From IMG/VR virus record IMGVR_UViG_3300036766_002289, positions 326,040 to 390,039 of that record: DNA of 64,000 nucleotides; one strand, given 5' to 3'. Each line of letters begins with the position of its first letter. Position 1 is the stretch's first letter. The notes under the pieces were generated by a model. That model searched no databases. It saw only the letters and a list, made by a program, of their open reading frames with translations, and was not told the DNA's origin. A program made the translations under genes and the position numbers. This document shows positions 1,995 to 41,021 of this stretch, piece after piece.

Positions 1995-2049
1995 GGAACA
2001 AAAGATACAAGAAATGAAAAAATAAATCAATATCATCCTAAATACTTTG

Positions 2050-2538: not shown

Positions 2539-2548
2539 TTTTTTGAAC

Positions 2549-2577: not shown

Positions 2578-2584
2578 ATGGTCT

Positions 2585-3689: not shown

Positions 3690-3691
3690 CA

Positions 3692-3705
3692 TATATAGTT
3701 ATATA
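3692..3705. promoter_or_regulatory. Two TATATA late-promoter-like motifs serving divergent genes
   Basis: TATATA at 3692-3697 and 3700-3705 between ATG 3689 (-) and ATG 3705 (+). Confidence 0.45.
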
Positions 3706-4258: not shown

Positions 4259-7200
4259 ATGTTGGACTCCCTTGGTAGAGACGTAGGCGATATTAAGAAC
4301 AATGTGCAGGCTATTAAAACTCAAATGTTGCAAGACATTGGGAAATCGGCCAAGGCTAATGGTTCCGACCCAAATAATAAGGAAGTTTTAAATAAAATTG
4401 CCACTCAACTAGAGACTATTGTTGGTTACAAACTAGATGTGCAATTTAAAGCTTTCAATAAGGCGCTGAATGATCTTGCTGAAGCCTGTGAAGACCTCGA
4501 TAAAAAAAAGGAAGATTTTAAAAAAGAAGCCAAAGAAATGGCGAAAGCAATTAACAATGATCCTACTGCAAGGGCTAACCATGCATTATTGCAAAACATA
4601 GCTGCCAACAAAGTAAATATCGGCGGCGGTGGAACAGCAAAACCAATTCCAGGACAACCCCGCGCTATTTCATCTATAAATAGCGGTGTTAACATAATAA
4701 GTAAATTTTTCCAAAATATGGTCGGTTTATTTAAAAAGAATAAAGGTATAGCAAGCGTGGCAGCAGGGACAACAGGTATGGGTGGTGGAGGTGGACCACC
4801 TCCACCAAAACCAGTGGCTGCTGGTGGTGAAGATGATGAGAAGAAGAAGAAAGAAACATGGAAAGAGTTCTTTAAAAGAACAGGGCAAGATCGTGGCAGT
4901 GAAATGACGGGGGTACTAACAGGTGGAAAGCCAATAGAGGCTATTGTAACTGGCTTGGGTAATTTATTAAGTAAAGGTTTAAGTAGTATTCCATTTGTAG
5001 GTGGGTTTTTAGGGGGGTTATTAGATGGTATATTAAAGCCACTATCTGATGAGTTAGAATACATTCGTGACATGTCTCGTGGTATGCTTAACACTTATGG
5101 GACTGGCATAGAAAACCTTAAGGGAAAAGTAGACGAATTTAGAGAGGCGTCACTTAAAACAGTGAGTGTTACAGGTCAAAGTCAATCACTTATATTAAAA
5201 GAACAAGCGAAGTATTACAAGAGGGGTATAACCGACCTCAAAACTCAAAATAGTGTTATGCGTGCTGGTTTACAGACTGCCACATTGATAAATTCTGATG
5301 CCGCTGAGACCTCTAGCATGTTTGCAGATTGGAGTCAACATCTTGGGGCATCAGAACATCAACTTAACATGATGGGTCGTGGTTTAGTTAATATAGGAAG
5401 ACAAAGTGGTTTGACAGGTCAAAATTTACTTCAAGTGGCAAAGGATTCTAAAACCTTCATGGAGAATATGAGATTGGCTGGAACATTCACAGCAAGCGCC
5501 GCCAATAACATCATGGGTATTATGGCTCAGGCACAAAAAACTGGTACGACGGCAGGCACTAGCAGAATTATGGCTGGATTAACTGGTGGTTTAATTGGCC
5601 CAGCTGTAGATGAAGGTACAAAAAGTACAATAATGAAGGCAGGTGGCTTAGGTGGTGCCAACATGATGGACCTTTTGGCTGGTACTGGAACGGAAGACCC
5701 AGAACAAATGAAACGAATCGCTAGTGGAATGGAGAAGTTAATTAGAATCTACAGTGGCGGTAAAAATCTAAATCAAATGACAATGCAGGAACGTGGCCTT
5801 GCGAGTCAGAGGATGGAGATTGGCGAAAGAGGACTTAAACTAAATGAAGCAGTATTAATTGCGCAAAACTTACGTAAAGGAGCCATGTCTTTTGATGAAC
5901 AATTGGCAGAGATTGGAGATAAATTAAACAGAAAGATTTATGCACCAGAAGAAGCACGAGTATTAAAAGAAAACGTTTTATTTGAAAAAGCGGATAAAAC
6001 AATAGAAGGTTTTAGGGACAATATGGAGCAAGCAAATCCAGAATTAAAAGACGCTTTAGACCAACAGGTGGCAATAGTTAATGCTAGGTCAAAGGAAGCG
6101 GGTGGTGCTGGTTTTTCCAGAGATGCTGGAGAAAGTAACGCAACATTATTAGAAAGAATACAAAAAGTTAACCAAGAAGCCGTTATAGCAGCAGAAAAGA
6201 AAAAAGACCCTTCTTTGAAACTTCTAAGTGATATTTATGAGATTGAGGCAATGATAAGGGAATATGTGTATGATGCAGTTTTTAATTTATTGCCGTTGAT
6301 TGCAACAGCTACTGGTGCGGTTCAAGAATGGGTTAGAAAAGCGTCCACTTTTATTAAAGAGACTGTATTCCCATTTTTCACAACTGAGTTATTTCCATTA
6401 TTTGAGAGAATTGGGGATTGGGTTTTTGGTATTTTCAAATTTCTTGACCCAAGAAGTGCTGCCGAAATTGTTGCAAACAGTCCTTTAACTAAGAAAATGA
6501 AACAAGATGTAGAAGATCAGCGTCTTGCTAATGCTGCCAATGCTGCTGGTGGGTTCGCAAACATGTCTCCAGCTGATCTTGCTAAAAAAAAGGCGGCAGT
6601 TGAGCAGGCACTTGCGGATAAGCAGGCAGTAAAGCCAGGGCTTGCGCAGGATATTAAAGATGCAATGGCGGTTAAGAGAGAAAAAGAATTTTTTGGGGCA
6701 GGACTTGTGCCACAAATTGCAGAAATTTTTCTAACCCCTGTTTGGAAAGCAAACGACATAAAAGAAAAACAAGCAAGAGAAGCATGGACAAAATTAGATG
6801 ATTCTACAAGAGTGTTGCAGAAAGACCTACAAGGTATTCAAACTCAAGAAACTTTTAATAAAGCCCTTCAAAATGCACAAACACCAGAACAAAGACAGGA
6901 TGTTCAGACTAAAATGGACAGGTATTATGAGTTGCAAAGAAAATCTGATGAGAATGTCGGGCCACGGGGCATTTTAGATAAACTTAAGGCATTCCCAGAA
7001 ATGCAAAATATCTTAAAAGAAGTAGGTAAAATGGCTTCAAACGCCGATAAGCCTGGTTCTATTTATACCCATGATGAATATCTTGAGGAATTGTTGCAAG
7101 GTGTGCCATCTTTAGTATCCGCAGCTATGCCAGGTGTAAATGTAGATGAAGAAGTTAAGAAAAGACAAATTGCCATTGACAATAGTAATGCAGAAATTGA

Positions 7201-7435
7201 AGCGAACACTAGTGATACAGCAAGCAACACTCGTCAAACGAATGTCTTACTAGGCACGCTTTTGAATGTCATAAGTAGGTCAGCTAGAAGGAGGGGCACA
7301 GATACACCAATTGCTGGGGAGGATGTTGATGATTCAGTATTTTTTGACCAGTTTATAGATGTTGATTGGGTCGATACGATAGCCAGAATGGTTGGTAATA
7401 CATGGGCACAAGGAAACCCAGGTAAGCATAACTAA
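4259..7435 (+). CDS. Tail tape measure protein
   Basis: 1058 aa, Ala/Gly/Lys-rich helical, hydrophobic GGFLGGLL segment, immediately upstream of the baseplate genes. Confidence 0.8.
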   Translation: MLDSLGRDVGDIKNNVQAIKTQMLQDIGKSAKANGSDPNNKEVLNKIATQLETIVGYKLDVQFKAFNKALNDLAEACEDLDKKKEDFKKEAKEMAKAINNDPTARANHALLQNIAANKVNIGGGGTAKPIPGQPRAISSINSGVNIISKFFQNMVGLFKKNKGIASVAAGTTGMGGGGGPPPPKPVAAGGEDDEKKKKETWKEFFKRTGQDRGSEMTGVLTGGKPIEAIVTGLGNLLSKGLSSIPFVGGFLGGLLDGILKPLSDELEYIRDMSRGMLNTYGTGIENLKGKVDEFREASLKTVSVTGQSQSLILKEQAKYYKRGITDLKTQNSVMRAGLQTATLINSDAAETSSMFADWSQHLGASEHQLNMMGRGLVNIGRQSGLTGQNLLQVAKDSKTFMENMRLAGTFTASAANNIMGIMAQAQKTGTTAGTSRIMAGLTGGLIGPAVDEGTKSTIMKAGGLGGANMMDLLAGTGTEDPEQMKRIASGMEKLIRIYSGGKNLNQMTMQERGLASQRMEIGERGLKLNEAVLIAQNLRKGAMSFDEQLAEIGDKLNRKIYAPEEARVLKENVLFEKADKTIEGFRDNMEQANPELKDALDQQVAIVNARSKEAGGAGFSRDAGESNATLLERIQKVNQEAVIAAEKKKDPSLKLLSDIYEIEAMIREYVYDAVFNLLPLIATATGAVQEWVRKASTFIKETVFPFFTTELFPLFERIGDWVFGIFKFLDPRSAAEIVANSPLTKKMKQDVEDQRLANAANAAGGFANMSPADLAKKKAAVEQALADKQAVKPGLAQDIKDAMAVKREKEFFGAGLVPQIAEIFLTPVWKANDIKEKQAREAWTKLDDSTRVLQKDLQGIQTQETFNKALQNAQTPEQRQDVQTKMDRYYELQRKSDENVGPRGILDKLKAFPEMQNILKEVGKMASNADKPGSIYTHDEYLEELLQGVPSLVSAAMPGVNVDEEVKKRQIAIDNSNAEIEANTSDTASNTRQTNVLLGTLLNVISRSARRRGTDTPIAGEDVDDSVFFDQFIDVDWVDTIARMVGNTWAQGNPGKHN

Positions 7436-7443: not shown

Positions 7444-8043
7444 ATGCCAAGGGGAACTGAAAGAAGTGGTCGTTTAGCAGTATTGAGCAAGTGTAAGATC
7501 ATTACACCTTGCGGTACTATCTGTCTAAGAATTCTACCAGATATTTCTGACAGCAAAGGCGCAAACTATGCCCAAGAAAATGCCATAGGTAGAAGTAATC
7601 CTATGATTACTTTCGCTTATTCTGAGCCAAGAATGATTAATACAGAACTCCGCTTCATGACAACTACCACGGATGACATAAATGATAACTGGCGCTCAGT
7701 AAGTATAATAAAAAGTTTAGTTTATCCTGGCACAGCGACTGTTGATGGTGGGGCACCTTTTACGCCGCCACCTGTAGTAAAGTTTGTTTGCGGTGATTTA
7801 ATGGATGGTCCTAATGGACTTTGCCTGATACTTAAAAACTATAACTTAAGATGGCCTACTAATGTAGCATGGGATGAAGAAACTTATCTGCCATATCAGT
7901 TTTCAATAAGTTGCAGTTGGGAAGTTGTATATGCCTGTAAGAACTTGCCATCTAATAATTGTAGTACATGCGCTCCTGATAGTCAAGTAGATTGCGAACC
8001 AATTACTGGTGTTGGCATACCTTATGTTGCTGGAGGGGGGTAA
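7444..8043 (+). CDS. Baseplate tail-tube initiator (gp48/gp54, CIS-tube-like)
   Basis: ANY...IGRSNP...Y...R...PPPVVKFVCG pattern and position after the tape measure gene. Confidence 0.65.
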   Translation: MPRGTERSGRLAVLSKCKIITPCGTICLRILPDISDSKGANYAQENAIGRSNPMITFAYSEPRMINTELRFMTTTTDDINDNWRSVSIIKSLVYPGTATVDGGAPFTPPPVVKFVCGDLMDGPNGLCLILKNYNLRWPTNVAWDEETYLPYQFSISCSWEVVYACKNLPSNNCSTCAPDSQVDCEPITGVGIPYVAGGG

Positions 8044-8068
8044 TCCAAAACCGATTACGGGGTAAAAT

Positions 8069-8395
8069 ATGGCCAATGAAATGAGTTATACGAATTATGG
8101 AACTAAAAACTTAGTCACGGCAACTAGTCGTTATGCATATAGGTCCGTAGTACATTACGGTAGTTTAAATAAGGTCACATTTGCCATTTATAAAACACCT
8201 GCAATCGGCCCATCTTCAGATGATAAGTTTTATGAGATAACTAAAGAGGTAGAGTTTAGACCAGATTTAGTATCTTTCAGGTTCTATGGATTGCCAGATT
8301 TTTGGTGGCGTATTATGGAAGTAAATAAGATGAAGGATATCATGGAGTTCAGAGCGGGCAGAAATATAAGATTGCCTGGTGGTTCATTGATGTAA
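8069..8395 (+). CDS. gp53: Baseplate wedge LysM-like protein (gp53-like)
   Basis: RPDLVSFRFYG-PDFWWRIMEVN...GRNIRLP. Confidence 0.75.
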   Translation: MANEMSYTNYGTKNLVTATSRYAYRSVVHYGSLNKVTFAIYKTPAIGPSSDDKFYEITKEVEFRPDLVSFRFYGLPDFWWRIMEVNKMKDIMEFRAGRNIRLPGGSLM

Positions 8396-8403
8396 GGAGG
8401 AAT

Positions 8404-10599
8404 ATGGGACGATGTGATCCTGTAGCAGGCCCTGTAGATGTATTTACATTATGTTCAAGCATTCAAGACAGTTTTAACGACATATATTGTTGTTCTGGAA
8501 CTGAAAACAAATTCATAGGCTTTGACCCATTAGAGCCTGACATACTTTTCGTAGCCAATGGTACATGCTTGAATTTTAATTTTCCATTAAAAAACGATGA
8601 CGGTGCGCCAATGTTGAAGTCTGTTCTAAATGCAACAGCACAGTCACCGTGGGTAAGAATAGCATTTCAAGAATATTGTGCAGATGGAAGCCGTTCGGTA
8701 TCTGCAACCAACCAAAGCATTATAACTACAGGAAACATATCACAGTCTGGTGGCGGTGGAGCAGAAACTTGCAATGCCGCAATTAAATCGTTCCAATATG
8801 GCTGGGGGACCGTAGATGGGGGAAATAGATGCAGAGTAACAATTATTGACGAAAAAGGTGGGAGTTTTGAAACTTGGGCCAAAAGAATGGCGACTAACAC
8901 AGAAGCAGCATCTACCCCTGTTAGAGGCTCTTATAAGATGAAGGTACAGTTTGGCTGGTATATTACAGGTGGTGGACCTGATGACCAATGTGGCCAACCT
9001 GCTGCACAACCAGGAGTTGCACCTGACCCAGGCCAAAACACATCATTCAACGTTTGTAGTCCTACTATGTGGTTCCTCCCAGACGCAATTACTGTTAATT
9101 GGGAAAATGGTAAGTTCATATACACTCTTGAAGGTGTTGATTTGTTGGTTAGAGGGCAGGAACAATCAATCAACAAAGCAATCGGGCAAGATGGTGGAGA
9201 TGGTAATCCATTTAACAAAAAGATGTTCTTCACAGATGCTGTTCAGCTTTTAGGTTCTTATTCAATGCCCCCTTTCCGAGTAAGGTTTTTATCATACAAT
9301 TCTGACCGTAAATTAGTGAGCATGAAGTTCATTAAAAGAGAAAATAACGCAATGGACGATGAATGCAAAGGTCCGTTTTCTCTTTATCAAACCAAGGAAA
9401 TGAAGCCTTTAGACATTATAAGATTCTGGCTTAAGGGAGTTCCAGTATTGGCAGTAGATCAAACTGGTAATATATCAACTCCAGGTAAAGAAATAGGTGT
9501 AACTATAAATTATGATTCAATACAAGATATGACAAATAGACCACTTACTAGTTTTCCAGTTGATGATTGTGAGGCATTTGTTCAGCTTGGTAATGAAATA
9601 TGCGTTGATAACTTGCCAGACGTTGGGACATTAATACTGTGGGCAGCAAATGGTGTTCCACATTGTCAAACGAACTTATCCGAGGCTCAAATCAATGCCA
9701 GCATGAACGCTGTTTATATTGTTAATGGTGGTAATTGCTCACCTGTTTTAGCCTTTAATCCAGTAGTGAGATGGCATTTCCTATTAGGCTTGAAAGCTGG
9801 TGGATATGTATTGCCTACAAAAGGCACAAATAGCAAGACTGCCGAAGCTTTAAATGCTACTGGATGTGCTGTATCTGGTGGTAGGTCAATGGTTGAGCAA
9901 CCTAAAGCTAATCAACCAGCAATGGGGGAACAAAACGATGCTGCGGCAGCGACCCAGCGCGCGGCAATATTGCATACAGCAGGTAATTTGGGTATCACAG
10001 CTATTGAAGCGGAATTGAGAGTGCAGGGTGATCCTAGTCCTTGGTTATGTTCTCCAATATTCGGAATGGCTAGGTGCGTGGGTATCATTTTCATCAATCC
10101 ATTCTTTTTACAAGAAGACCCAGAAGGAGATTGTCCACAATTTATGCAGACGACTTCCAGTCTATGTAATAATTTCTTGACTAACAAGGCTTGGTGGATT
10201 AAAGGTGTGGAGCATCAGATTAAAGAAGGTAGTTATATTACTACTATAAAGTTATCACTGCCTGCTCCTGGTGCCGAATTAAAGTTTGGTGCTGGGCCTG
10301 GGTCTGCTGGACCAGCAACTGGTTTGGGCGGATGCGCTGGTGGTGCTAAAATGCAATTTGGTGGGTTGAACGCCAACACGATTGAATATCCATTAGGAAA
10401 TACGGCGGGTGAATGGCTTGTGGTAACTGGCGGTGCTGTAGATTCAGGTTGTCCGCCAGTATGTTTCATTGGTGGTGGTAGTGCATGTTCAAGTGGTGAT
10501 ATATGTGATTTTATCGGGCCTGATGGTAAAGGAAGATGTAATGATGGGAGTTTTTGTGACGGGACTCAGGTAGGCGTGCCATGTCCTGGTGGAGATTAA
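8404..10599 (+). CDS. Baseplate hub protein (gp27/late control D-like), Cys-rich
   Basis: Position between gp53-like and spike. C-terminal AELRVQGDP...WWIKGVEHQIKEGSYITTIKL is typical of hub proteins. Confidence 0.65.
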   Translation: MGRCDPVAGPVDVFTLCSSIQDSFNDIYCCSGTENKFIGFDPLEPDILFVANGTCLNFNFPLKNDDGAPMLKSVLNATAQSPWVRIAFQEYCADGSRSVSATNQSIITTGNISQSGGGGAETCNAAIKSFQYGWGTVDGGNRCRVTIIDEKGGSFETWAKRMATNTEAASTPVRGSYKMKVQFGWYITGGGPDDQCGQPAAQPGVAPDPGQNTSFNVCSPTMWFLPDAITVNWENGKFIYTLEGVDLLVRGQEQSINKAIGQDGGDGNPFNKKMFFTDAVQLLGSYSMPPFRVRFLSYNSDRKLVSMKFIKRENNAMDDECKGPFSLYQTKEMKPLDIIRFWLKGVPVLAVDQTGNISTPGKEIGVTINYDSIQDMTNRPLTSFPVDDCEAFVQLGNEICVDNLPDVGTLILWAANGVPHCQTNLSEAQINASMNAVYIVNGGNCSPVLAFNPVVRWHFLLGLKAGGYVLPTKGTNSKTAEALNATGCAVSGGRSMVEQPKANQPAMGEQNDAAAATQRAAILHTAGNLGITAIEAELRVQGDPSPWLCSPIFGMARCVGIIFINPFFLQEDPEGDCPQFMQTTSSLCNNFLTNKAWWIKGVEHQIKEGSYITTIKLSLPAPGAELKFGAGPGSAGPATGLGGCAGGAKMQFGGLNANTIEYPLGNTAGEWLVVTGGAVDSGCPPVCFIGGGSACSSGDICDFIGPDGKGRCNDGSFCDGTQVGVPCPGGD

Positions 10600-12830
10600 T
10601 GGCTAATAGAAGAGAAACTTTAGAAAAAATATGGAAAATGCTTAATCGCCATGAAAAGCGATTAAAAGAAATGAATTTTCAAGAACTGTTCAATAGACTT
10701 TTCAACAAAAAATTCAATCTAATCCAGCAAGCAAATACTTATTTGGGCGTGCATCTTGCCCTTTGCGTAGATACCCGCGATCCATTCAAACAAAATAGAG
10801 TCAAATATTTTAGTCCTGTAATTGATACGCCTCTTATAGGCAGTGGTTTAGGTGTAGCTAATGCCCCGACTGGTGCTAGTCAAGTAACTAAAATTTCACA
10901 GTTAGATTGGGCGTGGCCAATTTCTTCTATGGGTGGTTTTGATGACTGTGGCTTGAATTGGGTTCCACCAGCAGGCTCAATGCTAGCCATTATATTCCTT
11001 AATGGTGATCCTGGACAAGCCTTCTATATTGGTAGCACTTGGTATAGAGATAAAGGCCCAATTCAGCACGATAACTGGAACTATCAAATACCAGAATATT
11101 ATAAAGTATCTGAAGGTCATCGTGGCGGTTATATGGTCGGCAAGAACGACGAATCACAAGTTTTACCACCACAAAATACCAATAATTATCAAGGCTTTGA
11201 TGTAGAAGGCAATATAGACGTAGAAGTAAATCCTGATCCTACTACATTAACAACTTACCCACATCTTTACAGCATTAATACCCCAGAAAAACACCGTGTT
11301 ATAATGGATGACGGTGATCCTAAATGTAATCGTAGATGGAAAAGGTTCGAGATCATTTCTAGTATGGGAAATTTGTTCTTGATGAAGGATGACCCATATC
11401 ATCATTGTGGGGAGTGGCTCAACCCAAAATGTTTCATACCAGCAGTAGAAGTAGTTCCAGATATATGTCAGATATCAATTACAAATTATGTTCTTCTGGA
11501 CGCGAGGGGAAAACCTGTTGATGGTAAAATCTCTAACATAATTACTTTCTACCCAGATGGAAATCAATACCCATGTGCGCAAGGAGAACAGTATTGTTCC
11601 TTTATAACTGGCCCTAATGGGGATGAACCACCAAGTTTAACTACAGACCAAGCATATTTAGGACAGGAGTTCCTATGTCCTTCTAAAACACCATTTCCAA
11701 ACGTGGTGCTGCCGCAGATTCCAGAAGATTGTTTGAATGGTGTTATTAATGGCATGACTGATTTTTGTTTTATCTTTAATAATATGGGTAAGAACAAATA
11801 TCAGAAACATAGACAGGAATGTTTTCCATATTACTGCCAGGATTGCGGGTTATTGCAATCTGGCATTCAGATACGTTCACGTTCTGGTGCTACGTTAGTT
11901 ATGGATGACTCGGTTGAAGAACCAAGAGAAAGAACAGAATGGGAAAGAACGCTCAAAGAATTTGATATGGATGGTTGTACTGGTAATTTCAGAGGTAGGA
12001 CTTACTGGAAGTCAGCAACGGGTCATTATATTGAGATGTGTGACATAGAAATTCAGCCTTCACTTAGAAGTGAAAGAAACGGAATTAACATCGTAACTGC
12101 TTGTGGCAACAAGATTTGCATGAATGACCAAACATTGCCTGGTTGTATAGCGGGGCCAGCGAGGGGTATTCACATAAGGAGTACGGCGGACCACACGATT
12201 GATTTATGTGACAGTACGAATAAGCAATGTAGTGATGTTAGAAGGGGATGTGAAAAGGGTGGTCCTTATGCTAAGAAGGCATTTGTCAGGATTAGAAGTG
12301 GTTATGGACTAACGATGACTTTTGCGGATGCGGATGACCAGATTAAAACAGATCAGCAATACATTCAGATCATGTCGCCACAAAAGGACAATTTGATTAG
12401 AGGTCCGCATGTTTTGCATATGCAGGAGAAGGCTGATGGGCCAGGTCAGGTATTCTTAAGGGCTGGTGGTGATTACATAGTGTATTCTTATGACCAGTTT
12501 GTTGAGGTGGTTGGAGAAGAAAAAGATAATCCAGCAGATAAAATGGAGTTTATCTCTAGGAACAAATTAGTTAGTGTAAGAAATGTTTATTACAACAAAG
12601 CGGAGACTCATGTATTTTGGGCAGACGACTATATATTTCTACTAGCAGGCAGAGATATTGGTAAGGGGCCAGTAGGTCAGGGTGATCCTACAATATATCC
12701 TGTTTGTGTTGCTTATGAGCAAATCCCTGAGTATGTTTCACAGGTTACTGGAATTAAGGCTAGTGAGCATGTATTTGCTTCTGCTTTGCCAGAACCTGAA
12801 GGCTGTGAAGGGGTTGCGAGCGATTTATAA
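10599..12830 (+). CDS. gp5: Central spike, gp5/VgrG-like (OB fold), no lysozyme domain seen
   Basis: ALCVDTRDPFKQNRVK...WAWP...GLNWVPPAGS...IFLNGDPGQAFYIG. SD GGAG before ATG 10599. Confidence 0.8.
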   Translation: MANRRETLEKIWKMLNRHEKRLKEMNFQELFNRLFNKKFNLIQQANTYLGVHLALCVDTRDPFKQNRVKYFSPVIDTPLIGSGLGVANAPTGASQVTKISQLDWAWPISSMGGFDDCGLNWVPPAGSMLAIIFLNGDPGQAFYIGSTWYRDKGPIQHDNWNYQIPEYYKVSEGHRGGYMVGKNDESQVLPPQNTNNYQGFDVEGNIDVEVNPDPTTLTTYPHLYSINTPEKHRVIMDDGDPKCNRRWKRFEIISSMGNLFLMKDDPYHHCGEWLNPKCFIPAVEVVPDICQISITNYVLLDARGKPVDGKISNIITFYPDGNQYPCAQGEQYCSFITGPNGDEPPSLTTDQAYLGQEFLCPSKTPFPNVVLPQIPEDCLNGVINGMTDFCFIFNNMGKNKYQKHRQECFPYYCQDCGLLQSGIQIRSRSGATLVMDDSVEEPRERTEWERTLKEFDMDGCTGNFRGRTYWKSATGHYIEMCDIEIQPSLRSERNGINIVTACGNKICMNDQTLPGCIAGPARGIHIRSTADHTIDLCDSTNKQCSDVRRGCEKGGPYAKKAFVRIRSGYGLTMTFADADDQIKTDQQYIQIMSPQKDNLIRGPHVLHMQEKADGPGQVFLRAGGDYIVYSYDQFVEVVGEEKDNPADKMEFISRNKLVSVRNVYYNKAETHVFWADDYIFLLAGRDIGKGPVGQGDPTIYPVCVAYEQIPEYVSQVTGIKASEHVFASALPEPEGCEGVASDL

Positions 12831-12838: not shown

Positions 12839-13252
12839 ATGCCGAAATACAGAGGAATAGTATACCCGCTAAGCAAGCATCATCAAGGGTTCTTGCATAA
12901 CGCTGACACGGATTTAGAGCAATTAAAATCCAATATGGCGACTATTATCTTGACAGAGCCTGGAGAACGGGTTTGCGAGCCTTATTACGGCACAATGATA
13001 CTTGGAGTCAACTTAAACAACCCTGAGCAAGTGGTGAAAGATACTTTTAGGCAGAATGTTGCAAAGGCTTTAAAAAGGTGGGAGAAAAGAATACAGGTTA
13101 ATGACGTTCAAATTAACCTCAACGTATACGAAGGTAATCTAATATTAATGATAAGTGTGTTCTTTATAGACCCTTTTAATTTAAAAAACAAAGAAGAATT
13201 GCACGTTCAAAAATCTCTTGGAGGAATTGATGGCAGACCTATGCCCTTTTGA
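12839..13252 (+). CDS. gp25: Baseplate wedge gp25-like
   Basis: LKSNMATIILTEPGERVCEPYYGT...ALKRWEKRIQV. Confidence 0.9.
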   Translation: MPKYRGIVYPLSKHHQGFLHNADTDLEQLKSNMATIILTEPGERVCEPYYGTMILGVNLNNPEQVVKDTFRQNVAKALKRWEKRIQVNDVQINLNVYEGNLILMISVFFIDPFNLKNKEELHVQKSLGGIDGRPMPF

Positions 13253-14807
13253 TGTAACACCTTTGGCAACTGCCAAAGTTATTAATAATACTCCTGTTTA
13301 TAATCTAAACTACACGAGTCAAGATTATAGCTCGATGAAGACAAGGTTATTAGAACTCATACATGCTAATTTCAATGATGAGTTCAATGATTTCACCGAA
13401 TCTAGTTTAGCGATGATGTTAATTGAATGCTGGGCTTGGTTAGCTGACCTGTTGTCGTTCAAGATCGACCAAATTGCTAATGAGTTATTCATTGATACTG
13501 TAACGGAGCCAGAGAATGCGTTCAGAATATCTAAATTAGTGGGTTTCAAACCTCAACCACCATTACCATCGAGAGCAATGTTTATAGCCTCTAAGAATAG
13601 CCCACATTCCTTAGACGTGTCAATGAAAACACCTGTTGTGGTACAACTAGAAACAGGGGTGAGTGAGATCAGGTATGAATTGTTTGCGGCGGACGTTAAT
13701 AACAATCCTATTTTTGGCCAGGATATAGTGATACCTGCTGGTAGTACCTTCAACAAGTCAGTAATAGGTTTAGAAGGTTCAAGTCATTCTGCAAATTACA
13801 AGAGTACTGGTAAGGCTAACCAAACTTATACATTGCCTTATCCTTCAGTATTTTATAACTCTATTCAAGTTAGGTCTGATGATTTGGTATGGGAGCAGGT
13901 AGAAAATTTCACGGAAGCAAAGGTTAGACCAGAATACATTGTTGAATACGATGCGGATTACAGGGCAAAAATTACTTTTGGCAATGGTAAGGCAGGACTG
14001 ATTCCACCCCAAAACTCAGAGATTAAGATTCTATTTAGAATAGCTAACAGAAATACAACTGAAATTATAACTGGAGCCTTTGAAAACAAAGTTCACGTTT
14101 CAGTGCCTGGTATACCACATGGAATTACAGTGGACTTTAAGAACTTCACGAAGAGTGATTATGGCTATCCAGGTGACTCTATCAATGAGATTAGGAAAAA
14201 ACTACCAAGTTTCCTAAGAACCCAAGATAGGGCTGTTACTGGTGCAGATTATAAATATCTAGCAAATAGATTTATGTCAGCACACAATGGTTCTATAGGA
14301 AAAGCTACAGCCGCGTTAAGAAATCATGGATGTGCTGGTAATATAATTGATATAATCGTTTTAGCTCAAACTGGAAATTGGAAATTAGTCAAGGCAAACG
14401 ATAATTTAAAGAGTGAATTATTAGAAGATTTAAATGGCAAGAAAATATTCACTGATTACCTTTGCATTAAAGATGGAGAAATAATCTTAACGGATATTCA
14501 TGTAGATATTGTGCTAGACAAAATCAATAAAAAGAATGAAGAAGCGGTTAAAAGAAAGATTGTAGAAATTTTAGATTGGTTTTTTGATCTACCAAATTGG
14601 GAATTTGGTCAATCGTTAAAAGAGTCAGATATAGTGAAAACGTTGGCTAGAGTTTCAGAAGTTAGAAGTTTTGAAATTGCTTTCGTGACTGCTAAAAATG
14701 TAAATACGGGGTCTACGGAGAATGTTTTAACTCCTAATTACAATGAGATCATAAGACCAGATAATATAATAATAAACTTTGTTTACAAATCTGCTGGGGA
14801 GTTATAA
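13230..14807 (+). CDS. gp6: Baseplate wedge gp6/baseplate J-like
   Basis: YTSQDYSS...FNDFTESS...DQIANE, ITFGNG, QDRAVTGADY. SD GGAGG before ATG 13230. Confidence 0.9.
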   Translation: MADLCPFDVTPLATAKVINNTPVYNLNYTSQDYSSMKTRLLELIHANFNDEFNDFTESSLAMMLIECWAWLADLLSFKIDQIANELFIDTVTEPENAFRISKLVGFKPQPPLPSRAMFIASKNSPHSLDVSMKTPVVVQLETGVSEIRYELFAADVNNNPIFGQDIVIPAGSTFNKSVIGLEGSSHSANYKSTGKANQTYTLPYPSVFYNSIQVRSDDLVWEQVENFTEAKVRPEYIVEYDADYRAKITFGNGKAGLIPPQNSEIKILFRIANRNTTEIITGAFENKVHVSVPGIPHGITVDFKNFTKSDYGYPGDSINEIRKKLPSFLRTQDRAVTGADYKYLANRFMSAHNGSIGKATAALRNHGCAGNIIDIIVLAQTGNWKLVKANDNLKSELLEDLNGKKIFTDYLCIKDGEIILTDIHVDIVLDKINKKNEEAVKRKIVEILDWFFDLPNWEFGQSLKESDIVKTLARVSEVRSFEIAFVTAKNVNTGSTENVLTPNYNEIIRPDNIIINFVYKSAGEL

Positions 14808-16637
14808 ATGGGCCGCAAGAAGTATACAGACAATCCTTCTGTCAACGATATTATTGTTTTCGACCTTAACACAGAAAACGATGACGGTCTGATTGCCGAC
14901 CCATTTTCCGTAGAAAAGATAACTATATTCTACCTAGAAAGAGGTTCGGGAAAAAATAACTTAAAATTAGAAAAAAAATTCAATAACCCAAGTTTACAAG
15001 AGCGGTATGATAGGCACAGAGAGATAGCTACAAGTGATCCTTCCCTAGATAACATCAAAATATTAAAGGACTTAAAAAACAGTCTAGACGCGACTGCTTT
15101 CACCACTCACATTTATTATAAAGAAGCTCAATTTGCCATGTCTACGCCAAGTCCCATATGGACAGCAGATGGTAAAGTAAGAAAGCTAGTTAATTTCGTT
15201 AATGAAAAAAAGCAAGTTTTGCCAGGAAGATTTTATTTTGCATGGCAACCGAAAGGTATGAGAGAAGGAACCTACATTATTAGATGGGAGTGGAAACTCG
15301 AAGAAAGTGGTACTATAAGAGCCGCAGAAAAAACTTTCACTATAAGTGCAGACCCCGAAGAGATTAAAAGCAACAACCTTAATCTAGCCCCAGAGGAGAA
15401 GTATGATTTTCTTTTGAGAAAGTACATGCCAACGATGTATCAAGTAAAGACTAAGCCCAATGATTTAACACCATATGTTTTAGAAAAACTAAATAAGTCT
15501 GTAGGTAAAGGATTTCAAGAAATAGAGAACATAGCAATCCAGCTTTCTACTTTACTCGACCCAGATACAATCAAAACTGATTTTCTACCTTTGCTTGCGA
15601 ACACTTTTGGTTTGACTTTAAGATCAGAGGACTCTGACGCATGGCGAAATCAAATAAGATATGCCCTCAATTTGTATAAAAAGAAAGGCACTTATGAAGG
15701 TTTAAGACAAGCCTTGGATAAGGCTAAGATTACTCTATTAAAACTAACTAATCTCTGGCAGGTTGTCTCCCGCAACATGTGGACAGATGGATTTTTGATT
15801 GACAGGGACATAAATCTTGAGACATTGATATTGGGTTATTTAACCAAAAAGCCAATTAATGATTTAGAAATAGAAATTCGTTCATCGGAAGATTTAAATT
15901 ATATAAAACTACCAAAAGAGATCATTAGTTTGCAGGAAGTGCAAGCCCCAGAAACGAAGACTGCTATTATCTGGCAAGGCGGCAATATTACGCCACAGAT
16001 ACCTTTACTAAAAGGGGATGTTATCAAGATAAGGTATGCATACAAAGATATACCAGATAGCGATTTAGCTATAGAAAAATATATAGACTCTTTGCCATTA
16101 GCGGATCAACGGGATGAAGCAGAGATAAAATACCCGCTCAAGAACTGGAACATAAAACTAATAGAAGAGGATGATCCTTTATTTAGTTTACTCATTACAG
16201 ATAGAAATCCTTTTCAGAGTCCAGTTGTGTTCGGCAAAATCAGGACAACATTCCTTTACAGTGAAAAGGTGTTCAACATGGATACCTACAATGGTAGTTT
16301 ATTCAACTCGAACAATCCATGTGATTTAGATAAAGATTTTATTGATACTTGTCATGGTGGTAGAAGCAGTAAGTTTAACGTTCATTTGGAATTTGATAAT
16401 GTTACTAATGATAAAATAAAAGAAGCTAAAGAAATAATCATAGATTATTCACCATTTCATGCTATGTTACATAACATAATCATAAGCAGTAAGACAACGG
16501 ACTATATCTTGCCCCCTATCGAGTCAATCAATAGCAGCATAAAAGAAAATAATAACAAGGACAAGGTTGGTGTAGGCGAGAATATAAACTGCAAAATCAA
16601 GTATAAAGACGGGAAAACAATAGAAGGGAGATTATGA
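14808..16637 (+). CDS. Baseplate protein gp7/P2-I-like
   Basis: FLPLLANTFG...WRNQIRYALNLYKKKGT-EGLRQAL tail protein I motif. Confidence 0.75.
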   Translation: MGRKKYTDNPSVNDIIVFDLNTENDDGLIADPFSVEKITIFYLERGSGKNNLKLEKKFNNPSLQERYDRHREIATSDPSLDNIKILKDLKNSLDATAFTTHIYYKEAQFAMSTPSPIWTADGKVRKLVNFVNEKKQVLPGRFYFAWQPKGMREGTYIIRWEWKLEESGTIRAAEKTFTISADPEEIKSNNLNLAPEEKYDFLLRKYMPTMYQVKTKPNDLTPYVLEKLNKSVGKGFQEIENIAIQLSTLLDPDTIKTDFLPLLANTFGLTLRSEDSDAWRNQIRYALNLYKKKGTYEGLRQALDKAKITLLKLTNLWQVVSRNMWTDGFLIDRDINLETLILGYLTKKPINDLEIEIRSSEDLNYIKLPKEIISLQEVQAPETKTAIIWQGGNITPQIPLLKGDVIKIRYAYKDIPDSDLAIEKYIDSLPLADQRDEAEIKYPLKNWNIKLIEEDDPLFSLLITDRNPFQSPVVFGKIRTTFLYSEKVFNMDTYNGSLFNSNNPCDLDKDFIDTCHGGRSSKFNVHLEFDNVTNDKIKEAKEIIIDYSPFHAMLHNIIISSKTTDYILPPIESINSSIKENNNKDKVGVGENINCKIKYKDGKTIEGRL

Positions 16638-23004: not shown

Positions 23005-26000
23005 ATGCCAAAGGCAATCCCAAAACCAGTATACCCAATTGCTTTAGATTCAAATTACACTCTATTTAGCACACATAATAGTGCGCAAACTCTCCTTGCC
23101 AAAGATTTAAGCATTACCAGTGATGTAATAGAAATCTATCCTAAGAGTGCTAATGATGCCGATGTTTGGGCCGAAAATGGTTTTGTCACGATTGAGAAAG
23201 AAATTATCTACTATGACAGTGTTACCAAAGATAAAAACAGCAAAATAACCCAATTAAAAGACTGCATAAGGGGAGTAGAAGGAGAAGTTAAAGCGTATGT
23301 CTCTGGCACTGCTATTTACGCAAACGTCGTTGCCCAATTACATAACCAATTAGTGGATGCAATCGTAGCCATAGAAAGCACAATTGGTGATATTTCTGAC
23401 ATGCTGAAGGTTGGAAATGACCTCAAAACACAGCAAAAAGTCAGAAAAAACCTTGTGCCTAAAAACATGGCAATGACTCAAATGGACACAGCCTTTACTG
23501 CGTCATTGCATCAGAATTTAACCGCGATGCTAGGTTGCGCTCCAGTTCCAGATGATGCTTGCCCAGATGTGGAATTTGAATTCAACATTCTAGGTTCTAC
23601 TGCTGAGTATTGTGTAAGAATTTTTGGAGATTATACAGCATTTGAAGTCGATTTTGGTGATGGTAATTCAACTACAACTCAATTGTCTGGCACCATAACA
23701 TTCAATGGAGGTAATCCCACAGTAACAGTCACAACCCCAACATGCACCCTTGTACAAATGCCGACAACTCCAGATGGTTGCGAAGCACCAGTATTGCCTA
23801 ATCCTTCAATTCCTTTTGTAATTGCGGTACCGTTTATACCAGATTGGCCTGGCTTTACTCCAAACAAGAATATATGTCCAGGTCCATTGTTCAGTTTGCC
23901 ACCAATTCAGTTTCCTAAATCTGAACTATGTTCTGTAATACCTAGTACATGCATCCCAAGTGTAATTATTTCTGTTATAGAATCCTGCAAGACCCCACAG
24001 ATCATCAGAATTGTCAGTCCTTGTAGAATCAGCATTATATCCTTAGTAGGATGTGAATTGCCTAGCATTATATCCCTAGTAGGGTGCTGTCCGCCTAGTA
24101 TAATCAGTGTAATTGCACCTAGTTTTAATTGCATAAGTTTCTGTCAGGTTCCAAGTTTTGAATGCATAAGTTTTTGCCAAGTCCCAAGCTTTGACTGCAT
24201 AAGTTTTTGTATGCCGCCGAGCATGGCCCCTGTTAGTTTTGCACCATTCCCAAGCATTGGTACTGTGTCTTTTGATGTTGCTATAAGCCTAAGCCCATTA
24301 TGCTTCTGCGAACCACCGAGTTTTGCACCTATTAGCTTTACTCCGTTCCCAAATATTAGCGCTGTATCGTTTGATGTTAATGTCGCATTGAGCTTAAGCC
24401 CAATATGCTTCTGTGAACCGCCAATTATTAGTTTTGCTCCATTCCCAAGCATAGGCGCTGTATCTTTTGATGTTGCTATAAGCTTAAGTCCATTATGCTT
24501 CTGCGAACCACCGAGTTTTGAGAAGATAAGTTTTGCTGAATTCCCGAGCGTTGGGAAAATATCATTCGATATCGCTGTTGAATTGAGTTTGAGTCCAATA
24601 TGTTTTTGTGACCCACCTAGTTTTGTGTGTATTGATTTTTGCACTCCACCAAGTTTTGGGATTGTTAGCTTTGCTCCGTTTCCAAGTATAGGGGCTGTAT
24701 CATTTGATGTTAATGTCGCACTGAGCCTAAGTCCAGTATGTTTCTGTGAACCACCTAGTTTTGCAGCTATTAGCTTTAATCCGTTCCCAAGCATAGGTGC
24801 GGTATCGTTTGATGTAATGCTTAGTTTGACTCCGTTGTGTTTCTGTGAACCACCTAGTTTTGCAGCTATTAGCTTTGCGCCGTTCCCAATCATAGGCCAA
24901 GTGTCATTTGATGTTGCTATAAGTCTAAGCCCATTATGTTTCTGTGAGCCACCAAGTTTTCAGTGCATTAGTTTTTGTCCACCACCTAATTTCGACCAAG
25001 TAAGTTTCGCACCTATAAGTTTTACTTCTTTCCCGAGCATTGGGACTGTATCGTTTGACGTTGCTATAAGTCTAAGCCCATTATGTTTCTGTGAGCCACC
25101 GAGTTTTTCTCAAATTAGTTTTGCACCATTCCCAAGTATAGGGATGGTGTCTTTTGACGTTCTCCTAAACGCAAGTTTGACTCCAATATGTTTCTGTGAG
25201 CCGCCAAGTTTCCAATGTATTAGTTTCTGCCATGTGCCTAGTTTTGATGTTGTTAGTTTTACTACACCACCAAGCTTCCACTGTGTAAGTTTCTGTGAAC
25301 CACCAAGCTTTAGCTTGATAAATTTTGCTACACCACCGAGCATTGTACCGATTAGCTTTGCACCATTCCCGAGCATTGGGACTGTATCCTTTGATGTTGC
25401 TTTGAACGCAAGTATAAGTCCTATATGTTTTTGCGAACCACCGAGTTTTTCACTTATTAGTTTTGCACCATTCCCAAGCTTGGGGGTAGTATCTTTCGAT
25501 GTGCTTTTAAATTTGAGCCTAAGTCCAATATGTTTCTGTGAAGTGCCAAGCTTTGCATGTATTAGTTTTTGTGAATTCCCAAGCATTGGCAAAGTATCTT
25601 TTGATGTTTTATTAAGTTTAAGTCCAGTTAGTTTTACTACGCCACCAAGCTTCCATTGTGTAAGTTTCTGTGAGCCACCAAGCTTCCATTGTGTAAGTTT
25701 CTGTGAGCCACCAAGCTTCCATTGTGTAAGTTTCTGTGAGCCACCAAGCTTTAGTTTAGTAAATTTTAATGCACCGCCAAGTTTTGCACTTGTTAGCTTT
25801 GCTCCATTTCCAGAAATTGGCAAGGTTTCATTCGACGTTATGTTGAATGCTAGTTTAAGTCCAGTATGTTTCTGTGAACCACCAAGCTTTGAATGCATAA
25901 GTTTCTGTCCTACTCCAAACTTTAACTTAGTGAGTTTTACTACTCCACCAAGTTTTCAATGTATAAGTTTTTGTGAGCCGCCAAGCTTTGGATGTGTGAG

Positions 26001-40414: not shown

Positions 40415-40422
40415 AATGAAGA

Positions 40423-40428
40423 TATATA
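40423..40428. promoter_or_regulatory. Palindromic TATATA between divergent genes
   Basis: 8 nt to ATG 40414 (-), 11 nt to ATG 40440 (+). Confidence 0.5.
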
Positions 40429-40439
40429 GTATTATTACC

Positions 40440-41021
40440 ATGCATGACAAAGAAAATATAATCAGGACCGATAGATTAATCGAAGCTACTCGTAAAAATC
40501 TTACTGGTCTAGAAGGTAAAATTGGTCAAATATTAAAATACATGGGTGAATCAGTTATCACTCAGGCTAGTGATTTTTACGAATCTTCAGATGCTGTTGG
40601 AACCCATATTTATGACCAACCTGAGAATGAAGATGATTTGCCAACCCAAGATATGGATACCTTGTCTAGGGAACTTGGTAGAATTTTATCTACTTTGCAA
40701 TGGGGTATAAATATGGAATTAAGCTATTTGAAAGAATGCCAGATACCAATTAAACGCAGTGAATTATACACTCAATGGGTAGAAGCTGAAAAAGTCCTAA
40801 CTGTTACATATAAAGGGTATGTAGTTTATAGAGAGATAGAAGGGGAATTAGAGAGTTATTTGCCAGACCCAGAATGGGAATCAGCAATTGATAGGATTTA
40901 TGAATCCTGCAAAAAAATTAAGAAAGACTCTAAACCAGAAAGAGATGCGGAAAAAACTGAGCGGACCCAACAAGAAAGATTAGGTTTTATAGCTAAATTG
41001 AGGGAAAAATGGGGGATTTAG
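40440..41021 (+). CDS. Hypothetical protein
   Basis: Clean ORF, likely start MHDK. Confidence 0.65.
   Translation: MHDKENIIRTDRLIEATRKNLTGLEGKIGQILKYMGESVITQASDFYESSDAVGTHIYDQPENEDDLPTQDMDTLSRELGRILSTLQWGINMELSYLKECQIPIKRSELYTQWVEAEKVLTVTYKGYVVYREIEGELESYLPDPEWESAIDRIYESCKKIKKDSKPERDAEKTERTQQERLGFIAKLREKWGI

What the first reader, a model, noticed from the sequence alone, without database searches (positions are those of the whole stretch)
7444..12830. Tail-tip proteins are strongly cysteine-enriched
Hand counts: tube initiator about 10 Cys in 199 aa, hub about 28 in 731, spike about 24 in 743. The tape measure has 1 in 1058 and the MCP 4 in 478. The same bias occurs in the fibre and the metalloprotease tail. 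Inference: the baseplate tip is disulphide-locked or metal-crosslinked, possibly acting as a redox-sensitive trigger for tail contraction. This is unusual for virions assembled in a reducing cytoplasm.
Basis: partly seen in the sequence, partly recalled or inferred. Interest (0 to 1): 0.6.

Follow-up and report, generated by a model that had tools for sequence, protein, structure and literature searches.

The report
Cysteine-rich needle core of a huge phage tail
Three neighbouring genes for the central needle of a huge uncultured sediment phage's contractile tail really are packed with conserved cysteines, which most likely act as built-in staples (disulfide or metal) that stiffen the needle, not as a redox trigger for contraction.

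Summary
The counts are exact: 10 Cys in 199 aa, 28 in 731 and 24 in 749, against 1 in 1058 for the tape measure and 4 in 478 for the capsid protein. Together the three proteins hold 3.7% Cys. The rest of the 390-kb genome has 1.9% (p 2e-6), already high. Fifteen other virion-module proteins have 0.47% (p 1e-34). T4 gp5, gp27 and gp48 have 0, 2 and 1 Cys.

The bias is a family trait. It recurs in syntenic modules of three relatives with 41-64% identical spikes. About half of the hub's Cys positions and a third of the spike's and initiator's are kept in at least 80% of 33-60 homologues. One spike Cys pair, absent here, was gained or lost together at least 11 times.

The hub folds like gp27/VgrG. 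The spike has the gp5 OB domain. The "tube initiator" label is only weakly supported.

Best reading: static cross-links, mostly disulfide pairs and possibly some His/Cys metal sites, that rigidify the needle. The redox-trigger idea is not supported, because the wedge proteins that trigger contraction are Cys-poor. Phages Milano and Pam3, where redox control is shown, have the opposite layout. I could not measure Cys-Cys distances because the tools gave no model coordinates.

The parts
7444..8043 (+). 199-aa Cys-rich protein (10 Cys, 5.0%) directly after the tape measure; probably a tube-fold tube initiator or cap.
   Evidence: Count. 113 homologues: C127 invariant, C17 in 109 of 114, C116 in 111 of 114. 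C157 and C165 co-occur (79 both, 31 neither, 4 single), as do C23 and C173 (49 both, 62 neither, 3 single). Fold label is weak: Pfam CIS_tube in 4 of 49 members, best E 0.007; the nearest named Atlas clusters are CIS_tube and T4_tail_cap at 0.90-0.91; hhalign against T4 gp48 found nothing.
8069..8395 (+). 108-aa small baseplate protein lying inside the Cys-rich block but with no Cys at all.
   Evidence: PHROG 7145 'baseplate wedge subunit', E 1e-11. It has 0 Cys here and in three relatives.
8404..10599 (+). Central baseplate hub of the gp27 / VgrG / Mu gp44 fold; 731 aa, 28 Cys (3.8%). It has an N-terminal Cys cluster (C4, C17, C29, C30, C55) and a variable Gly/Cys-rich C-terminal tail (7 Cys in residues 683-727).
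   Evidence: AlphaFold2 model at pLDDT 68.5. Foldseek matches to CIS, VgrG, gp27 and Mu gp44 hubs at E 4e-11 to 1e-5. 43 homologues. Cys conservation. Inteins in five full-length homologues sit exactly before invariant C445.
10581..12830 (+). Central spike, gp5-like: N-terminal helices, OB domain, a poorly modelled Cys-rich middle region and a beta-rich C-terminal part; 749 aa, 24 Cys (3.2%), 16 His.
   Evidence: Pfam Phage_base_V at 28.5 bits against a cut-off of 23.8, residues 106-154. Model at pLDDT 68. Weak Foldseek hits to central spikes, best 8kea_D at E 6e-4. 401 homologues. Invariant C249, C284 and C414; C332, C366, C466, C550 and C742 kept in at least 87%. His is the best-conserved residue type.
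4259..7435 (+). Tape-measure protein by position and size; Cys-poor contrast (1 Cys in 1058 aa).
   Evidence: Equivalents in relatives have 4 in 1640, 3 in 2245 and 2 in 1843. No family hit.
12839..16637 (+). Baseplate wedge genes (gp25-like, gp6/J-like, P2 gpI-like); Cys-poor contrast (1 in 137, 4 in 529, 3 in 609).
   Evidence: Pfam GPW_gp25 E 1e-10, PHROG 219 E 2e-30, Pfam Tail_P2_I E 1e-12. Counts. Same pattern in relatives.
23005..27339 (+). It is built from 11-residue units (PPSFxCISFCE) and 33-35-residue units ending in CFCE.
   Evidence: Among 44 PPSF 11-mers, positions 6 and 10 are both Cys (19) or neither (25), never one (Fisher p 7e-13). No Pfam or PHROG hit. The LR756511 homologue is shorter, with the same units and 5.5% Cys.
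38792..40450 (-).
   Evidence: No Pfam family and no PHROG family. It lies outside the tail module, on the other strand.

Best explanation
The three genes encode the axial core of a contractile-tail baseplate in an uncultured huge phage from sediment. The parts are a small tube-fold initiator-like protein, a gp27/VgrG-type hub and a gp5-type spike. Their cysteine excess is an old, conserved trait of this gene module. I read it as static reinforcement. Most of the conserved Cys act in pairs as disulfide staples that close loops and hairpins and perhaps tie subunits together. These would form when the finished particle leaves the reducing cytoplasm. A minority of Cys, together with the strongly conserved His of the spike, may hold metal ions on the threefold axis. 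The result would be a stiff, covalently braced needle for piercing the host envelope. The device that senses the host and triggers contraction (wedges, fibres) stays Cys-poor. Shown here: the counts, the fold identities of hub and spike, conservation of the bias and of the positions, and coupled gain and loss of at least one Cys pair. Inferred: that the coupled residues are bonded, that the bonds are disulfides and not metal ligands, when they form, and their mechanical role.
For: (1) Enrichment: 62 Cys in 1679 aa, against 1.94% in the genome and 0.47% in other virion proteins.
(2) The trait is not general to myophage needles: T4 gp5 has 0 Cys in 575 aa, gp27 2 in 391, gp48 1 in 364 and gp54 2 in 320.
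(3) The same pattern (tape measure low, initiator high, 108-aa protein zero, hub high, spike high, gp25-like zero, wedge low) recurs in LR756511 and in two contigs whose spikes are only 41% identical.
(4) Cys is among the best-conserved residue types. In the hub its mean identity is 0.64 against 0.43 for all residues. In the spike it is 0.63 against 0.51.
(5) Coupling: the spike columns at reference positions 693 and 704 hold Cys together in 93 of 113 homologues. They changed 13 and 12 times on the tree, with at least 11 changes on the same branches. In independent contrasts the partner went the same way 10 times and the opposite way never (sign test p 0.002). A crude hypergeometric estimate gives 7e-16, or 2e-13 after correction for 351 pairs. 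In the model these positions flank a loop between strands. Both are lost together in this window's own protein.
(6) The pairs C116/C127, C157/C165 and C23/C173 of the small protein, and its even Cys counts in 82 of 114 homologues.
(7) The tip Cys are not zinc-knuckle modules. There are only 2 CxxC motifs among 62 Cys, whereas genome-wide about 19% of Cys sit in CxxC (243 motifs). Replacements are mostly V, I, A, S or T, not H or D.
(8) All-or-none Cys pairs in the 11-residue units of the neighbouring repeat protein.
(9) Precedent for disulfide-braced phage tails: Milano (PMC10811340) and Pam3 (PMC9942802).
Against: No coordinates were available, so no Cys-Cys distance was measured. Hub and spike show no even-number bias in Cys count (16 of 33 and 56 of 113 even). 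The pair co-occurrences in the small protein rest on only 1-3 evolutionary events and are not significant on the tree. The best-supported pair (693/704) is absent from this window's own protein. The second pair (522/550) lies in a region with uncertain alignment. The DNA comes from a sediment metagenome, possibly anoxic, where disulfides may not form. No thiol oxidase (Erv1/ALR) or DsbA was found, only an ordinary CGPC thioredoxin. That absence is weak, because the record may be a fragment and the Erv1/ALR control search rang in no control genome. His is the most conserved residue type in the spike, and several invariant Cys lie near invariant His, which favours metal sites. Some Cys alternate with V, I or L and may simply be buried free thiols.
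Confidence: 0.42

Rival explanations
1. Metal centres are the main purpose. The conserved Cys, with the conserved His, bind Fe, Zn or Fe-S clusters that assemble in the cytoplasm and brace the trimeric hub-spike. Known examples are the [4Fe-4S] cluster of lambda gpL, the iron-loaded tips of the P2 and phi92 spikes, and the zinc site of PAAR.
For: His is the best-conserved residue type in the spike: H238, H274, H482, H538 and H610 are kept in at least 92% of 60 homologues, and H482 is replaced by Cys once. Invariant Cys lie close to invariant His (H238/C249, H274/C284, H410/C414). The hub has two runs of four nearly invariant Cys (123, 143, 196, 218 and 389, 400, 421, 445), with spacings no odder than those of gpL (173, 182, 205, 212; PMC10721106). 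There is no parity bias in hub or spike. Metal sites need no oxidant, which suits cytoplasmic assembly and a sediment habitat. C742, kept in 54 of 60 homologues, lies 8 residues from the spike's C-terminus. No PAAR cap was found in the record, so three C742 could meet at the tip.
Against: CxxC or CxxH knuckles are almost absent. There is no profile similarity between the hub and lambda gpL, and no PDB sequence relative at all. Cys are replaced by aliphatic or small residues and almost never by His or Asp. The clearest coupling is strictly pairwise and dispensable.
Confidence: 0.27
2. There is no special chemistry. This phage lineage uses Cys freely (about 2% genome-wide). Surface-exposed virion proteins are purged of Cys, while the buried axial proteins are not. 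Most tip Cys would then be buried free thiols serving as small hydrophobic residues.
For: The genome background is 2.18%. The other virion proteins are strongly depleted at 0.47%, so much of the contrast is depletion elsewhere. Many Cys columns alternate with V, I, L, A, S or T, for example spike C62, C123, C543 and C709 and hub C558 and C588. Against the genome background the single-protein p-values are modest, 0.0007 to 0.013.
Against: The pooled enrichment still stands at about 1.9-fold over the genome (p 2e-6). Cys conservation is well above the average residue and comparable to Trp, Tyr and Gly, which unbonded Cys rarely reach. Eight positions are invariant across 33-114 homologues. There is pairwise co-change. 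An intein targets the invariant NGGNC motif, and inteins usually sit in functionally constrained sites.
Confidence: 0.18
3. One reading: the tip is locked by disulfides or metal, and release of that lock by reduction is the signal that lets the tail contract or lets the needle leave the tube.
For: The concept is real elsewhere. Milano tails contract only with a reductant plus a denaturant, and Pam3 tails contract after DTT (PMC10811340, PMC9942802). The needle must leave the tube end for DNA to pass, so a covalent latch between initiator, hub and spike would have to open. The phage encodes a thioredoxin.
Against: In both precedents the bonds lie in sheath, tube, wedge and fibres. Here the wedge proteins are Cys-poor or Cys-free. 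The sheath gene was not found. The ORFs that stand where sheath and tube would be, by position only, have 3 Cys in 436 aa and 0 in 163. Coupled Cys pairs are repeatedly lost without loss of the gene, as expected for optional staples and not for an essential trigger. A needle fired into an oxidising periplasm meets no obvious reductant. A phage thioredoxin is ordinary nucleotide-metabolism equipment.
Confidence: 0.08

Closest known systems
T4 gp27-gp5 cell-puncturing device (with gp48/gp54 tube initiators)
   Same: Same place in the machine and same folds. The hub model matches gp27, VgrG and Mu gp44. The spike carries the gp5 OB domain. The gene order of tape measure, initiator, hub, spike, gp25-like and wedge is that of simple contractile tails.
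   Different: T4's parts are almost free of Cys (gp5 0, gp27 2, gp48 1, gp54 2). No lysozyme domain was recognised in the spike. There is no sequence-level similarity to any solved structure. No PAAR cap was found.
Disulfide network of Agrobacterium phage Milano (and 7-7-1), PMC10811340
   Same: A contractile tail with elevated Cys in structural proteins. Covalent bracing was proposed to stabilise the particle.
   Different: Milano's bonds link sheath, tube, wedge and receptor-binding proteins and must be reduced before contraction. Here those parts are Cys-poor and the excess is confined to the axial core. Milano's structural proteins have 2.1% Cys, whereas these three have 3.2-5.0%.
Cyanophage Pam3 wedge-fibre disulfides, PMC9942802
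   Same: A myophage baseplate with Cys-rich regions; DTT alters the tail.
   Different: The Pam3 bonds tie fibres to wedges and wedges to each other, not hub to spike.
Lambda gpL-type [4Fe-4S] tail-tip proteins (Tam et al. 2013, as cited in PMC10721106)
   Same: A hub-domain protein at a tail tip with four conserved, widely spaced Cys. It shows that tail-tip Cys can be metal ligands assembled in the cytoplasm.
   Different: It belongs to a siphophage. There is no detectable profile similarity. The Cys here are far more numerous and spread over three proteins.
Iron-loaded spikes of P2 gpV / phi92 gp138 and zinc-binding PAAR tips (cited in PMC10715212; details from my own knowledge)
   Same: Metal ions on the axis of a trimeric spike tip. 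Here His is highly conserved and a near-invariant Cys lies 8 residues from the C-terminus.
   Different: Those sites are mainly made of His. No homology was detected.

Membership tests
gp27 / VgrG / Mu gp44 central hub | Hub fold with tandem tube-like beta-barrel domains | tested here: met
   Foldseek of the AlphaFold2 model gave 53 PDB matches at E <= 0.001. All the listed ones are hubs or spike-hub fusions of phages, CIS and T6SS; the best is 7aef_q at E 4e-11, and T4 gp27 (1k28_D) scores 2e-7. The model's confidence is moderate (pLDDT 68.5).
gp27 / VgrG / Mu gp44 central hub | Sequence-family membership (Pfam, PHROG or a PDB relative) | tested here: not met
   No Pfam or PHROG family and no PDB sequence match. 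The relationship is seen at fold level only.
gp5-type central spike (Phage_base_V) | N-terminal OB domain above Pfam's gathering score | tested here: met
   PF04717 at 28.5 bits against a cut-off of 23.8, residues 106-154. Most homologues carry the same precomputed domain.
gp5-type central spike (Phage_base_V) | Trimeric C-terminal beta-helix | tested here: inconclusive
   The monomer model is beta-rich from residue 428 to 660 and resembles single-layer sheets and spike chains only weakly (E 6e-4 to 1e-2). The trimer could not be modelled.
Tube initiator / tube cap (T4 gp48, CIS tube fold) | Tube-protein fold, or similarity to gp48/gp54 | tested here: inconclusive
   CIS_tube was hit below the cut-off in 4 of 49 members, best E 0.007. 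The Atlas gave leads at 0.90-0.91 only. hhalign against T4 gp48 gave probability 0.1. Its position after the tape measure fits.
Milano/Pam3-type redox-locked contractile tail | Cys-rich sheath, tube, wedge or fibre-attachment proteins forming inter-subunit bonds | tested here: not met
   gp25-like 1 Cys in 137 aa, gp6-like 4 in 529, P2 gpI-like 3 in 609. The relatives have 0-1%. The sheath gene was not identified.
Milano/Pam3-type redox-locked contractile tail | Contraction depends on a reductant | not testable with these tools
   The phage is uncultured; no virions are available.
Lambda gpL-type Fe-S tail-tip protein | Homology to gpL and its four-Cys C-terminal domain | tested here: not met
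   hhalign of the hub profile against lambda gpL gave probability 0.14 over 12 columns.
Lambda gpL-type Fe-S tail-tip protein | Bound [4Fe-4S] cluster | not testable with these tools
   This needs the purified protein.
PAAR spike cap | PAAR_motif protein encoded with the spike | tested here: not met
   PF05488 gave no match in the 390-kb record at E <= 1. The record may be incomplete. The 108-aa neighbour has no Cys and one His.

The most novel reading that the evidence does not exclude
A whole clade of huge phages builds its needle core as a covalently or metal-latched plug. Initiator, hub and spike would be tied to each other by inter-subunit disulfides or shared Cys/His metal clusters, and the plug would open for DNA passage only after thiol exchange or metal loss inside the host envelope. 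That would be a redox- or metal-gated release step at the tube mouth, distinct from the contraction trigger. The neighbouring 1444-aa protein would be a new Cys-ladder solenoid fibre built on the same chemistry.
Probability: 0.1. Interest if true: 0.7.

Novelty: new variant of a known kind. Interest (0 to 1): 0.4.

Why it matters
Covalent bracing of phage tails has been seen only in a few cultured phages, and there in the outer, triggering parts. This looks like an old, conserved version confined to the inner needle of a large clade of uncultured huge phages. The model system, T4, has essentially no Cys in the same parts. If the Cys are cross-links, they tell structural biologists where these very long tails need extra rigidity. 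They also give a simple handle (reductants, chelators, Cys-to-Ser changes) for studying needle release. If the Cys are metal sites, this would extend the lambda gpL Fe-S puzzle to contractile tails. The practical value is modest until a relative is cultured or the complex is expressed.

Tried and rejected
Structure prediction returns confidence and secondary structure but no coordinates.
- The search for related loci in viral contigs with the hub found nothing.
- Sequence and profile searches of the PDB with all three families found nothing useful.
- hhalign of the hub against lambda gpL, and of the small protein against T4 gp48, found no similarity.
- Parity of Cys counts as a disulfide signature is present only in the small protein (82 of 114 even), not in the hub (16 of 33) or the spike (56 of 113).
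- Raw co-occurrence of Cys columns is mostly clade structure. On a tree, the pairs of the small protein and most spike and hub pairs rest on 1-6 events and are not significant. Only 693/704 survives clearly. 522/550 survives nominally but lies beside alignment-variable insertions. The co-changes in the hub's N-terminal cluster may reflect truncated N-termini, because gaps were scored as non-Cys.
- Redox enzymes in the genome: no Erv1/ALR (its control search rang in no control genome, so that blank is uninformative), no glutaredoxin and no DsbA. There is one ordinary CGPC thioredoxin.
- The sheath and tube genes could not be identified: Pfam Phage_sheath_1, Phage_sheath_1C and T4_gp19, the T4 gp18 protein, PHROGs and tblastn against the phage collection all found nothing. 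The statement that sheath and tube are Cys-poor therefore rests on position only.
- No cultured relative exists in the phage collection for the hub, the spike or the repeat protein; only LR756511 matched.
- I did not run the large representative-protein search.
Full report
**What the window is.** The window is the last 64 kb of a 390,039-bp IMG/VR virus record and comes from a sediment metagenome. Its capsid protein is T4-like: 87% identical to that of the 595-kb uncultured phage LR756511.1, and about 30-35% identical to those of Microcystis, Xanthomonas and cyanobacterial myophages.

Homologues of the genes studied here lie on contigs of up to 586-669 kb, so this is a member of a clade of huge phages. 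No cultured phage carries a recognisable hub or spike homologue.

**The gene module.** All genes are on the + strand.

| Coordinates | Size | Identity and evidence |
|---|---|---|
| 4259-7435 | 1058 aa | Tape measure by size and position; no family hit |
| 7444-8043 | 199 aa | P0001, the "tube initiator" |
| 8069-8395 | 108 aa | PHROG 7145, baseplate protein |
| 8404-10599 | 731 aa | P0002, the hub |
| 10581-12830 | 749 aa | P0003, the spike; Pfam Phage_base_V OB domain above the cut-off |
| 12839-13252 | 137 aa | gp25-like |
| 13218-14807 | 529 aa | gp6/J-like |
| 14808-16637 | 609 aa | P2 gpI-like |
| 16634-17098 | 154 aa | Tail-collar fibre N-terminus |
| 17141-18184 | 347 aa | LAGLIDADG homing endonuclease |
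| 19882-22976 | 330 and 701 aa | Two PKD-domain proteins |
| 23005-27339 | 1444 aa | P0004, the repeat protein |

- The genome as a whole is Cys-rich. It has 2.18% over 606 crude ORFs, and 1.94% over ORFs of at least 150 aa with the four outliers removed. The Milano paper quotes 0.9% for T4 and 1.4% for Milano (PMC10811340).
- Much of that background sits in CxxC modules: 243 motifs genome-wide. Examples are the HNH endonuclease at 2585-3523, which has 20 Cys.
- Against this background the three tip proteins are enriched about 1.9-fold (pooled p 2e-6).
- Against the 15 other virion-module proteins of the window (0.47%) they are enriched about 8-fold (p 1e-34).
- The observation therefore stands. 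Part of the contrast is depletion of Cys in the other virion proteins.
- Base composition is not the cause, because the tape-measure gene has the same G+C.

**What the three proteins are.**

- The hub model (pLDDT 68.5) matches gp27, VgrG and Mu gp44 hubs of phages, contractile injection systems and T6SS, at Foldseek E from 4e-11 down to 1e-5.
- The spike has the gp5-type OB domain. It also has N-terminal helices, a poorly modelled Cys-rich middle region (about residues 290-400) and a beta-rich C-terminal half. It matches central spikes only weakly, as expected when one chain of a trimer is modelled alone.
- The "tube initiator" label for the 199-aa protein rests on position and weak evidence. 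Pfam CIS_tube was hit in 4 of 49 family members, best E 0.007. The nearest named Atlas clusters were CIS_tube and T4_tail_cap at 0.90-0.91. Profile comparison with T4 gp48 found nothing.

**The bias is a conserved family trait.** The syntenic modules of LR756511 (spike 64% identical) and of two contigs whose spikes are about 41% identical show the same alternation.

| Protein | Cys in the three relatives |
|---|---|
| Tape measure | 0.1-0.2% |
| Initiator | 2.3-3.9% |
| 108-aa protein | 0 |
| Hub | 1.8-3.1% |
| Spike | 3.0-3.5% |
| gp25-like | 0 |
| Wedge proteins | 0.7-1.0% |

Across homologues the spike holds 2.2-3.9% Cys and the hub 2.8-4.1%. The T4 counterparts are essentially Cys-free: gp5 0 in 575, gp27 2 in 391, gp48 1 in 364, gp54 2 in 320.

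**The positions are conserved.**

- Hub (33 sequences, mean column identity 36%): 15 of 28 Cys are kept in at least 80% of the other sequences. C123, C196, C445 and C577 are invariant.
- Spike (60 sequences): C249, C284 and C414 are invariant. C332, C366, C466, C550 and C742 are kept in at least 87%.
- Small protein (114 sequences): C127 is invariant and C17 and C116 nearly so.
- By residue type, Cys ranks third in the hub (0.64 against a mean of 0.43) and fourth in the spike (0.63 against 0.51). In the spike His ranks first.
- Five full-length hub homologues carry an intein with a LAGLIDADG domain inserted exactly before invariant C445 in the NGGN|CSPV motif. This marks that Cys-containing site as highly constrained.

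**Do the Cys act in pairs?** Raw co-occurrence is dominated by clade structure, so I counted changes on trees.

- Most candidate pairs rest on too few events to be significant.
- One pair is clear. The spike columns at reference positions 693 and 704 hold Cys together in 93 of 113 homologues. They changed 13 and 12 times, with at least 11 changes on the same branches.
- In independent contrasts the partner went the same way 10 times and the opposite way never (sign test p 0.002). A crude branch-overlap estimate gives 7e-16.
- The two columns flank a loop in the model.
- Both are absent, lost together, in this window's protein. The family therefore uses such pairs as optional staples.
- A second pair, C522/C550, is present here and sits symmetrically around a predicted hairpin. 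It is nominally coupled (7 shared changes) but lies beside alignment-variable insertions.
- The small protein shows the pairs C157/C165 and C23/C173 and an excess of even Cys counts (82 of 114). Hub and spike show no parity bias.
- Only two CxxC motifs occur among the 62 tip Cys.

**Interpretation.** The best-supported reading is static cross-linking of the needle core. I favour mostly disulfide pairs, with some His/Cys metal sites possible, above all in the spike, where His is strikingly conserved and C742 sits 8 residues from the C-terminus with no PAAR cap in the record.

I cannot separate disulfide from metal without coordinates or chemistry. The sediment source, the absence of a recognisable thiol oxidase and the lack of parity in hub and spike keep the metal rival alive. 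Precedents exist for both kinds of site:

- Milano and Pam3 for disulfides (PMC10811340, PMC9942802).
- Lambda gpL for an Fe-S cluster in a hub-domain protein (PMC10721106).

**The redox-trigger idea.** In Milano and Pam3 the bonds that must be reduced lie in sheath, tube, wedge and fibre attachments. Here the wedge proteins are Cys-poor or Cys-free, in this phage and in its relatives.

The coupled Cys pair is repeatedly lost in evolution, which does not fit an essential trigger. The sheath gene could not be identified, so nothing can be said about it directly. I rate this reading at about 0.08.

**The "fibre" and the "metalloprotease".** The 1444-aa protein has no family hit.

- It is built of 11-residue PPSFxCISFCE units and 33-35-residue units ending in CFCE. 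83 of its 88 Cys are in this repeat region.
- Among 44 PPSF 11-mers, positions 6 and 10 are both Cys (19) or neither (25), never one (p 7e-13). Repeat units are related by duplication, so this p-value overstates independence.
- The LR756511 homologue has the same units but far fewer of them.
- This looks like an undescribed Cys-pair solenoid repeat and may be the more original object in the window.

The "metalloprotease" is a 552-aa protein on the minus strand with a single HExxH motif and a Cys-rich C-terminal third. It has no family support.

**Limits.**

- No Cys-Cys distances could be measured.
- Both models have moderate confidence.
- The record (390 kb) is much shorter than its nearest relatives (about 590 kb). 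It may be a fragment, so the gene absences are weak evidence.
- ORFs for the genome background were called crudely.

Noticed in passing
window 23005-27339 (+): A 1444-aa protein made of about 40 tandem modules. These are 11-residue units (PPSFxCISFCE) and 33-35-residue units ending in CFCE, each with exactly two Cys or none. It has no Pfam or PHROG family. The repeat number differs greatly from the LR756511 homologue. Its C-terminal 230 aa hold a second repeat of about 10-11 residues of the form (D/G)IPxxI. It may be a new Cys-ladder solenoid or fibre repeat.
   Followed up: partly
hub homologues P0008-P0011 and P0039 (P0016 truncated); site equivalent to window 9733-9738: Five full-length relatives (plus truncated P0016) carry a roughly 340-aa intein with a LAGLIDADG domain inserted exactly before the invariant Cys445 of the hub (NGGN|C...HN|CSPV). 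The window's own hub has no intein.
   Followed up: partly
window 2585-3523 (+), 17141-18184 (+), 45475-46290 (-): Homing-type endonuclease genes (HNH, LAGLIDADG with HTH domains, HNH) are scattered through the structural module. The first one is absent at the same place in LR756511. The HNH protein at 2585-3523 has 20 Cys in 312 aa.
   Followed up: partly
whole record G000 (390,039 bp): The genome-wide Cys content is about 2.2% of residues, with 243 CxxC motifs in 606 ORFs. That is roughly twice the usual phage or bacterial level. Head, wedge and tape-measure proteins have only 0.47%. The proteome seems split between Cys-rich intracellular proteins and Cys-purged exposed virion proteins.
   Followed up: partly
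window 38792-40450 (-): A 552-aa protein with one HExxH motif at residue 137 and 12 Cys in residues 361-552. It has no family hit, so 'metalloprotease' is unverified.
   Followed up: partly
G000:C1:15412-15717 (+), outside the window: A canonical thioredoxin (101 aa, CGPC active site). It is the only thiol-redox enzyme found in the record.
   Followed up: partly
record level: IMG/VR classes the record as a 'provirus' at 98% completeness. Its closest relatives are free 586-596-kb phage genomes, and the window ends at the record's end, so the record may be a fragment.
   Followed up: no
window 8069-8395 (+): A 108-aa baseplate protein (PHROG 7145) lies in the middle of the Cys-rich block. It has no Cys at all in this phage or in three relatives, a sharp local exception.
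   Followed up: partly
window 1-4205 and G000 upstream: No sheath or tube gene could be recognised by Pfam, PHROGs, the T4 gp18 protein or tblastn, although the baseplate is clearly of the contractile type. The candidates by position are the 436-aa ORF ending at window position 22 and the 163-aa ORF at 2047-2538.
   Followed up: partly
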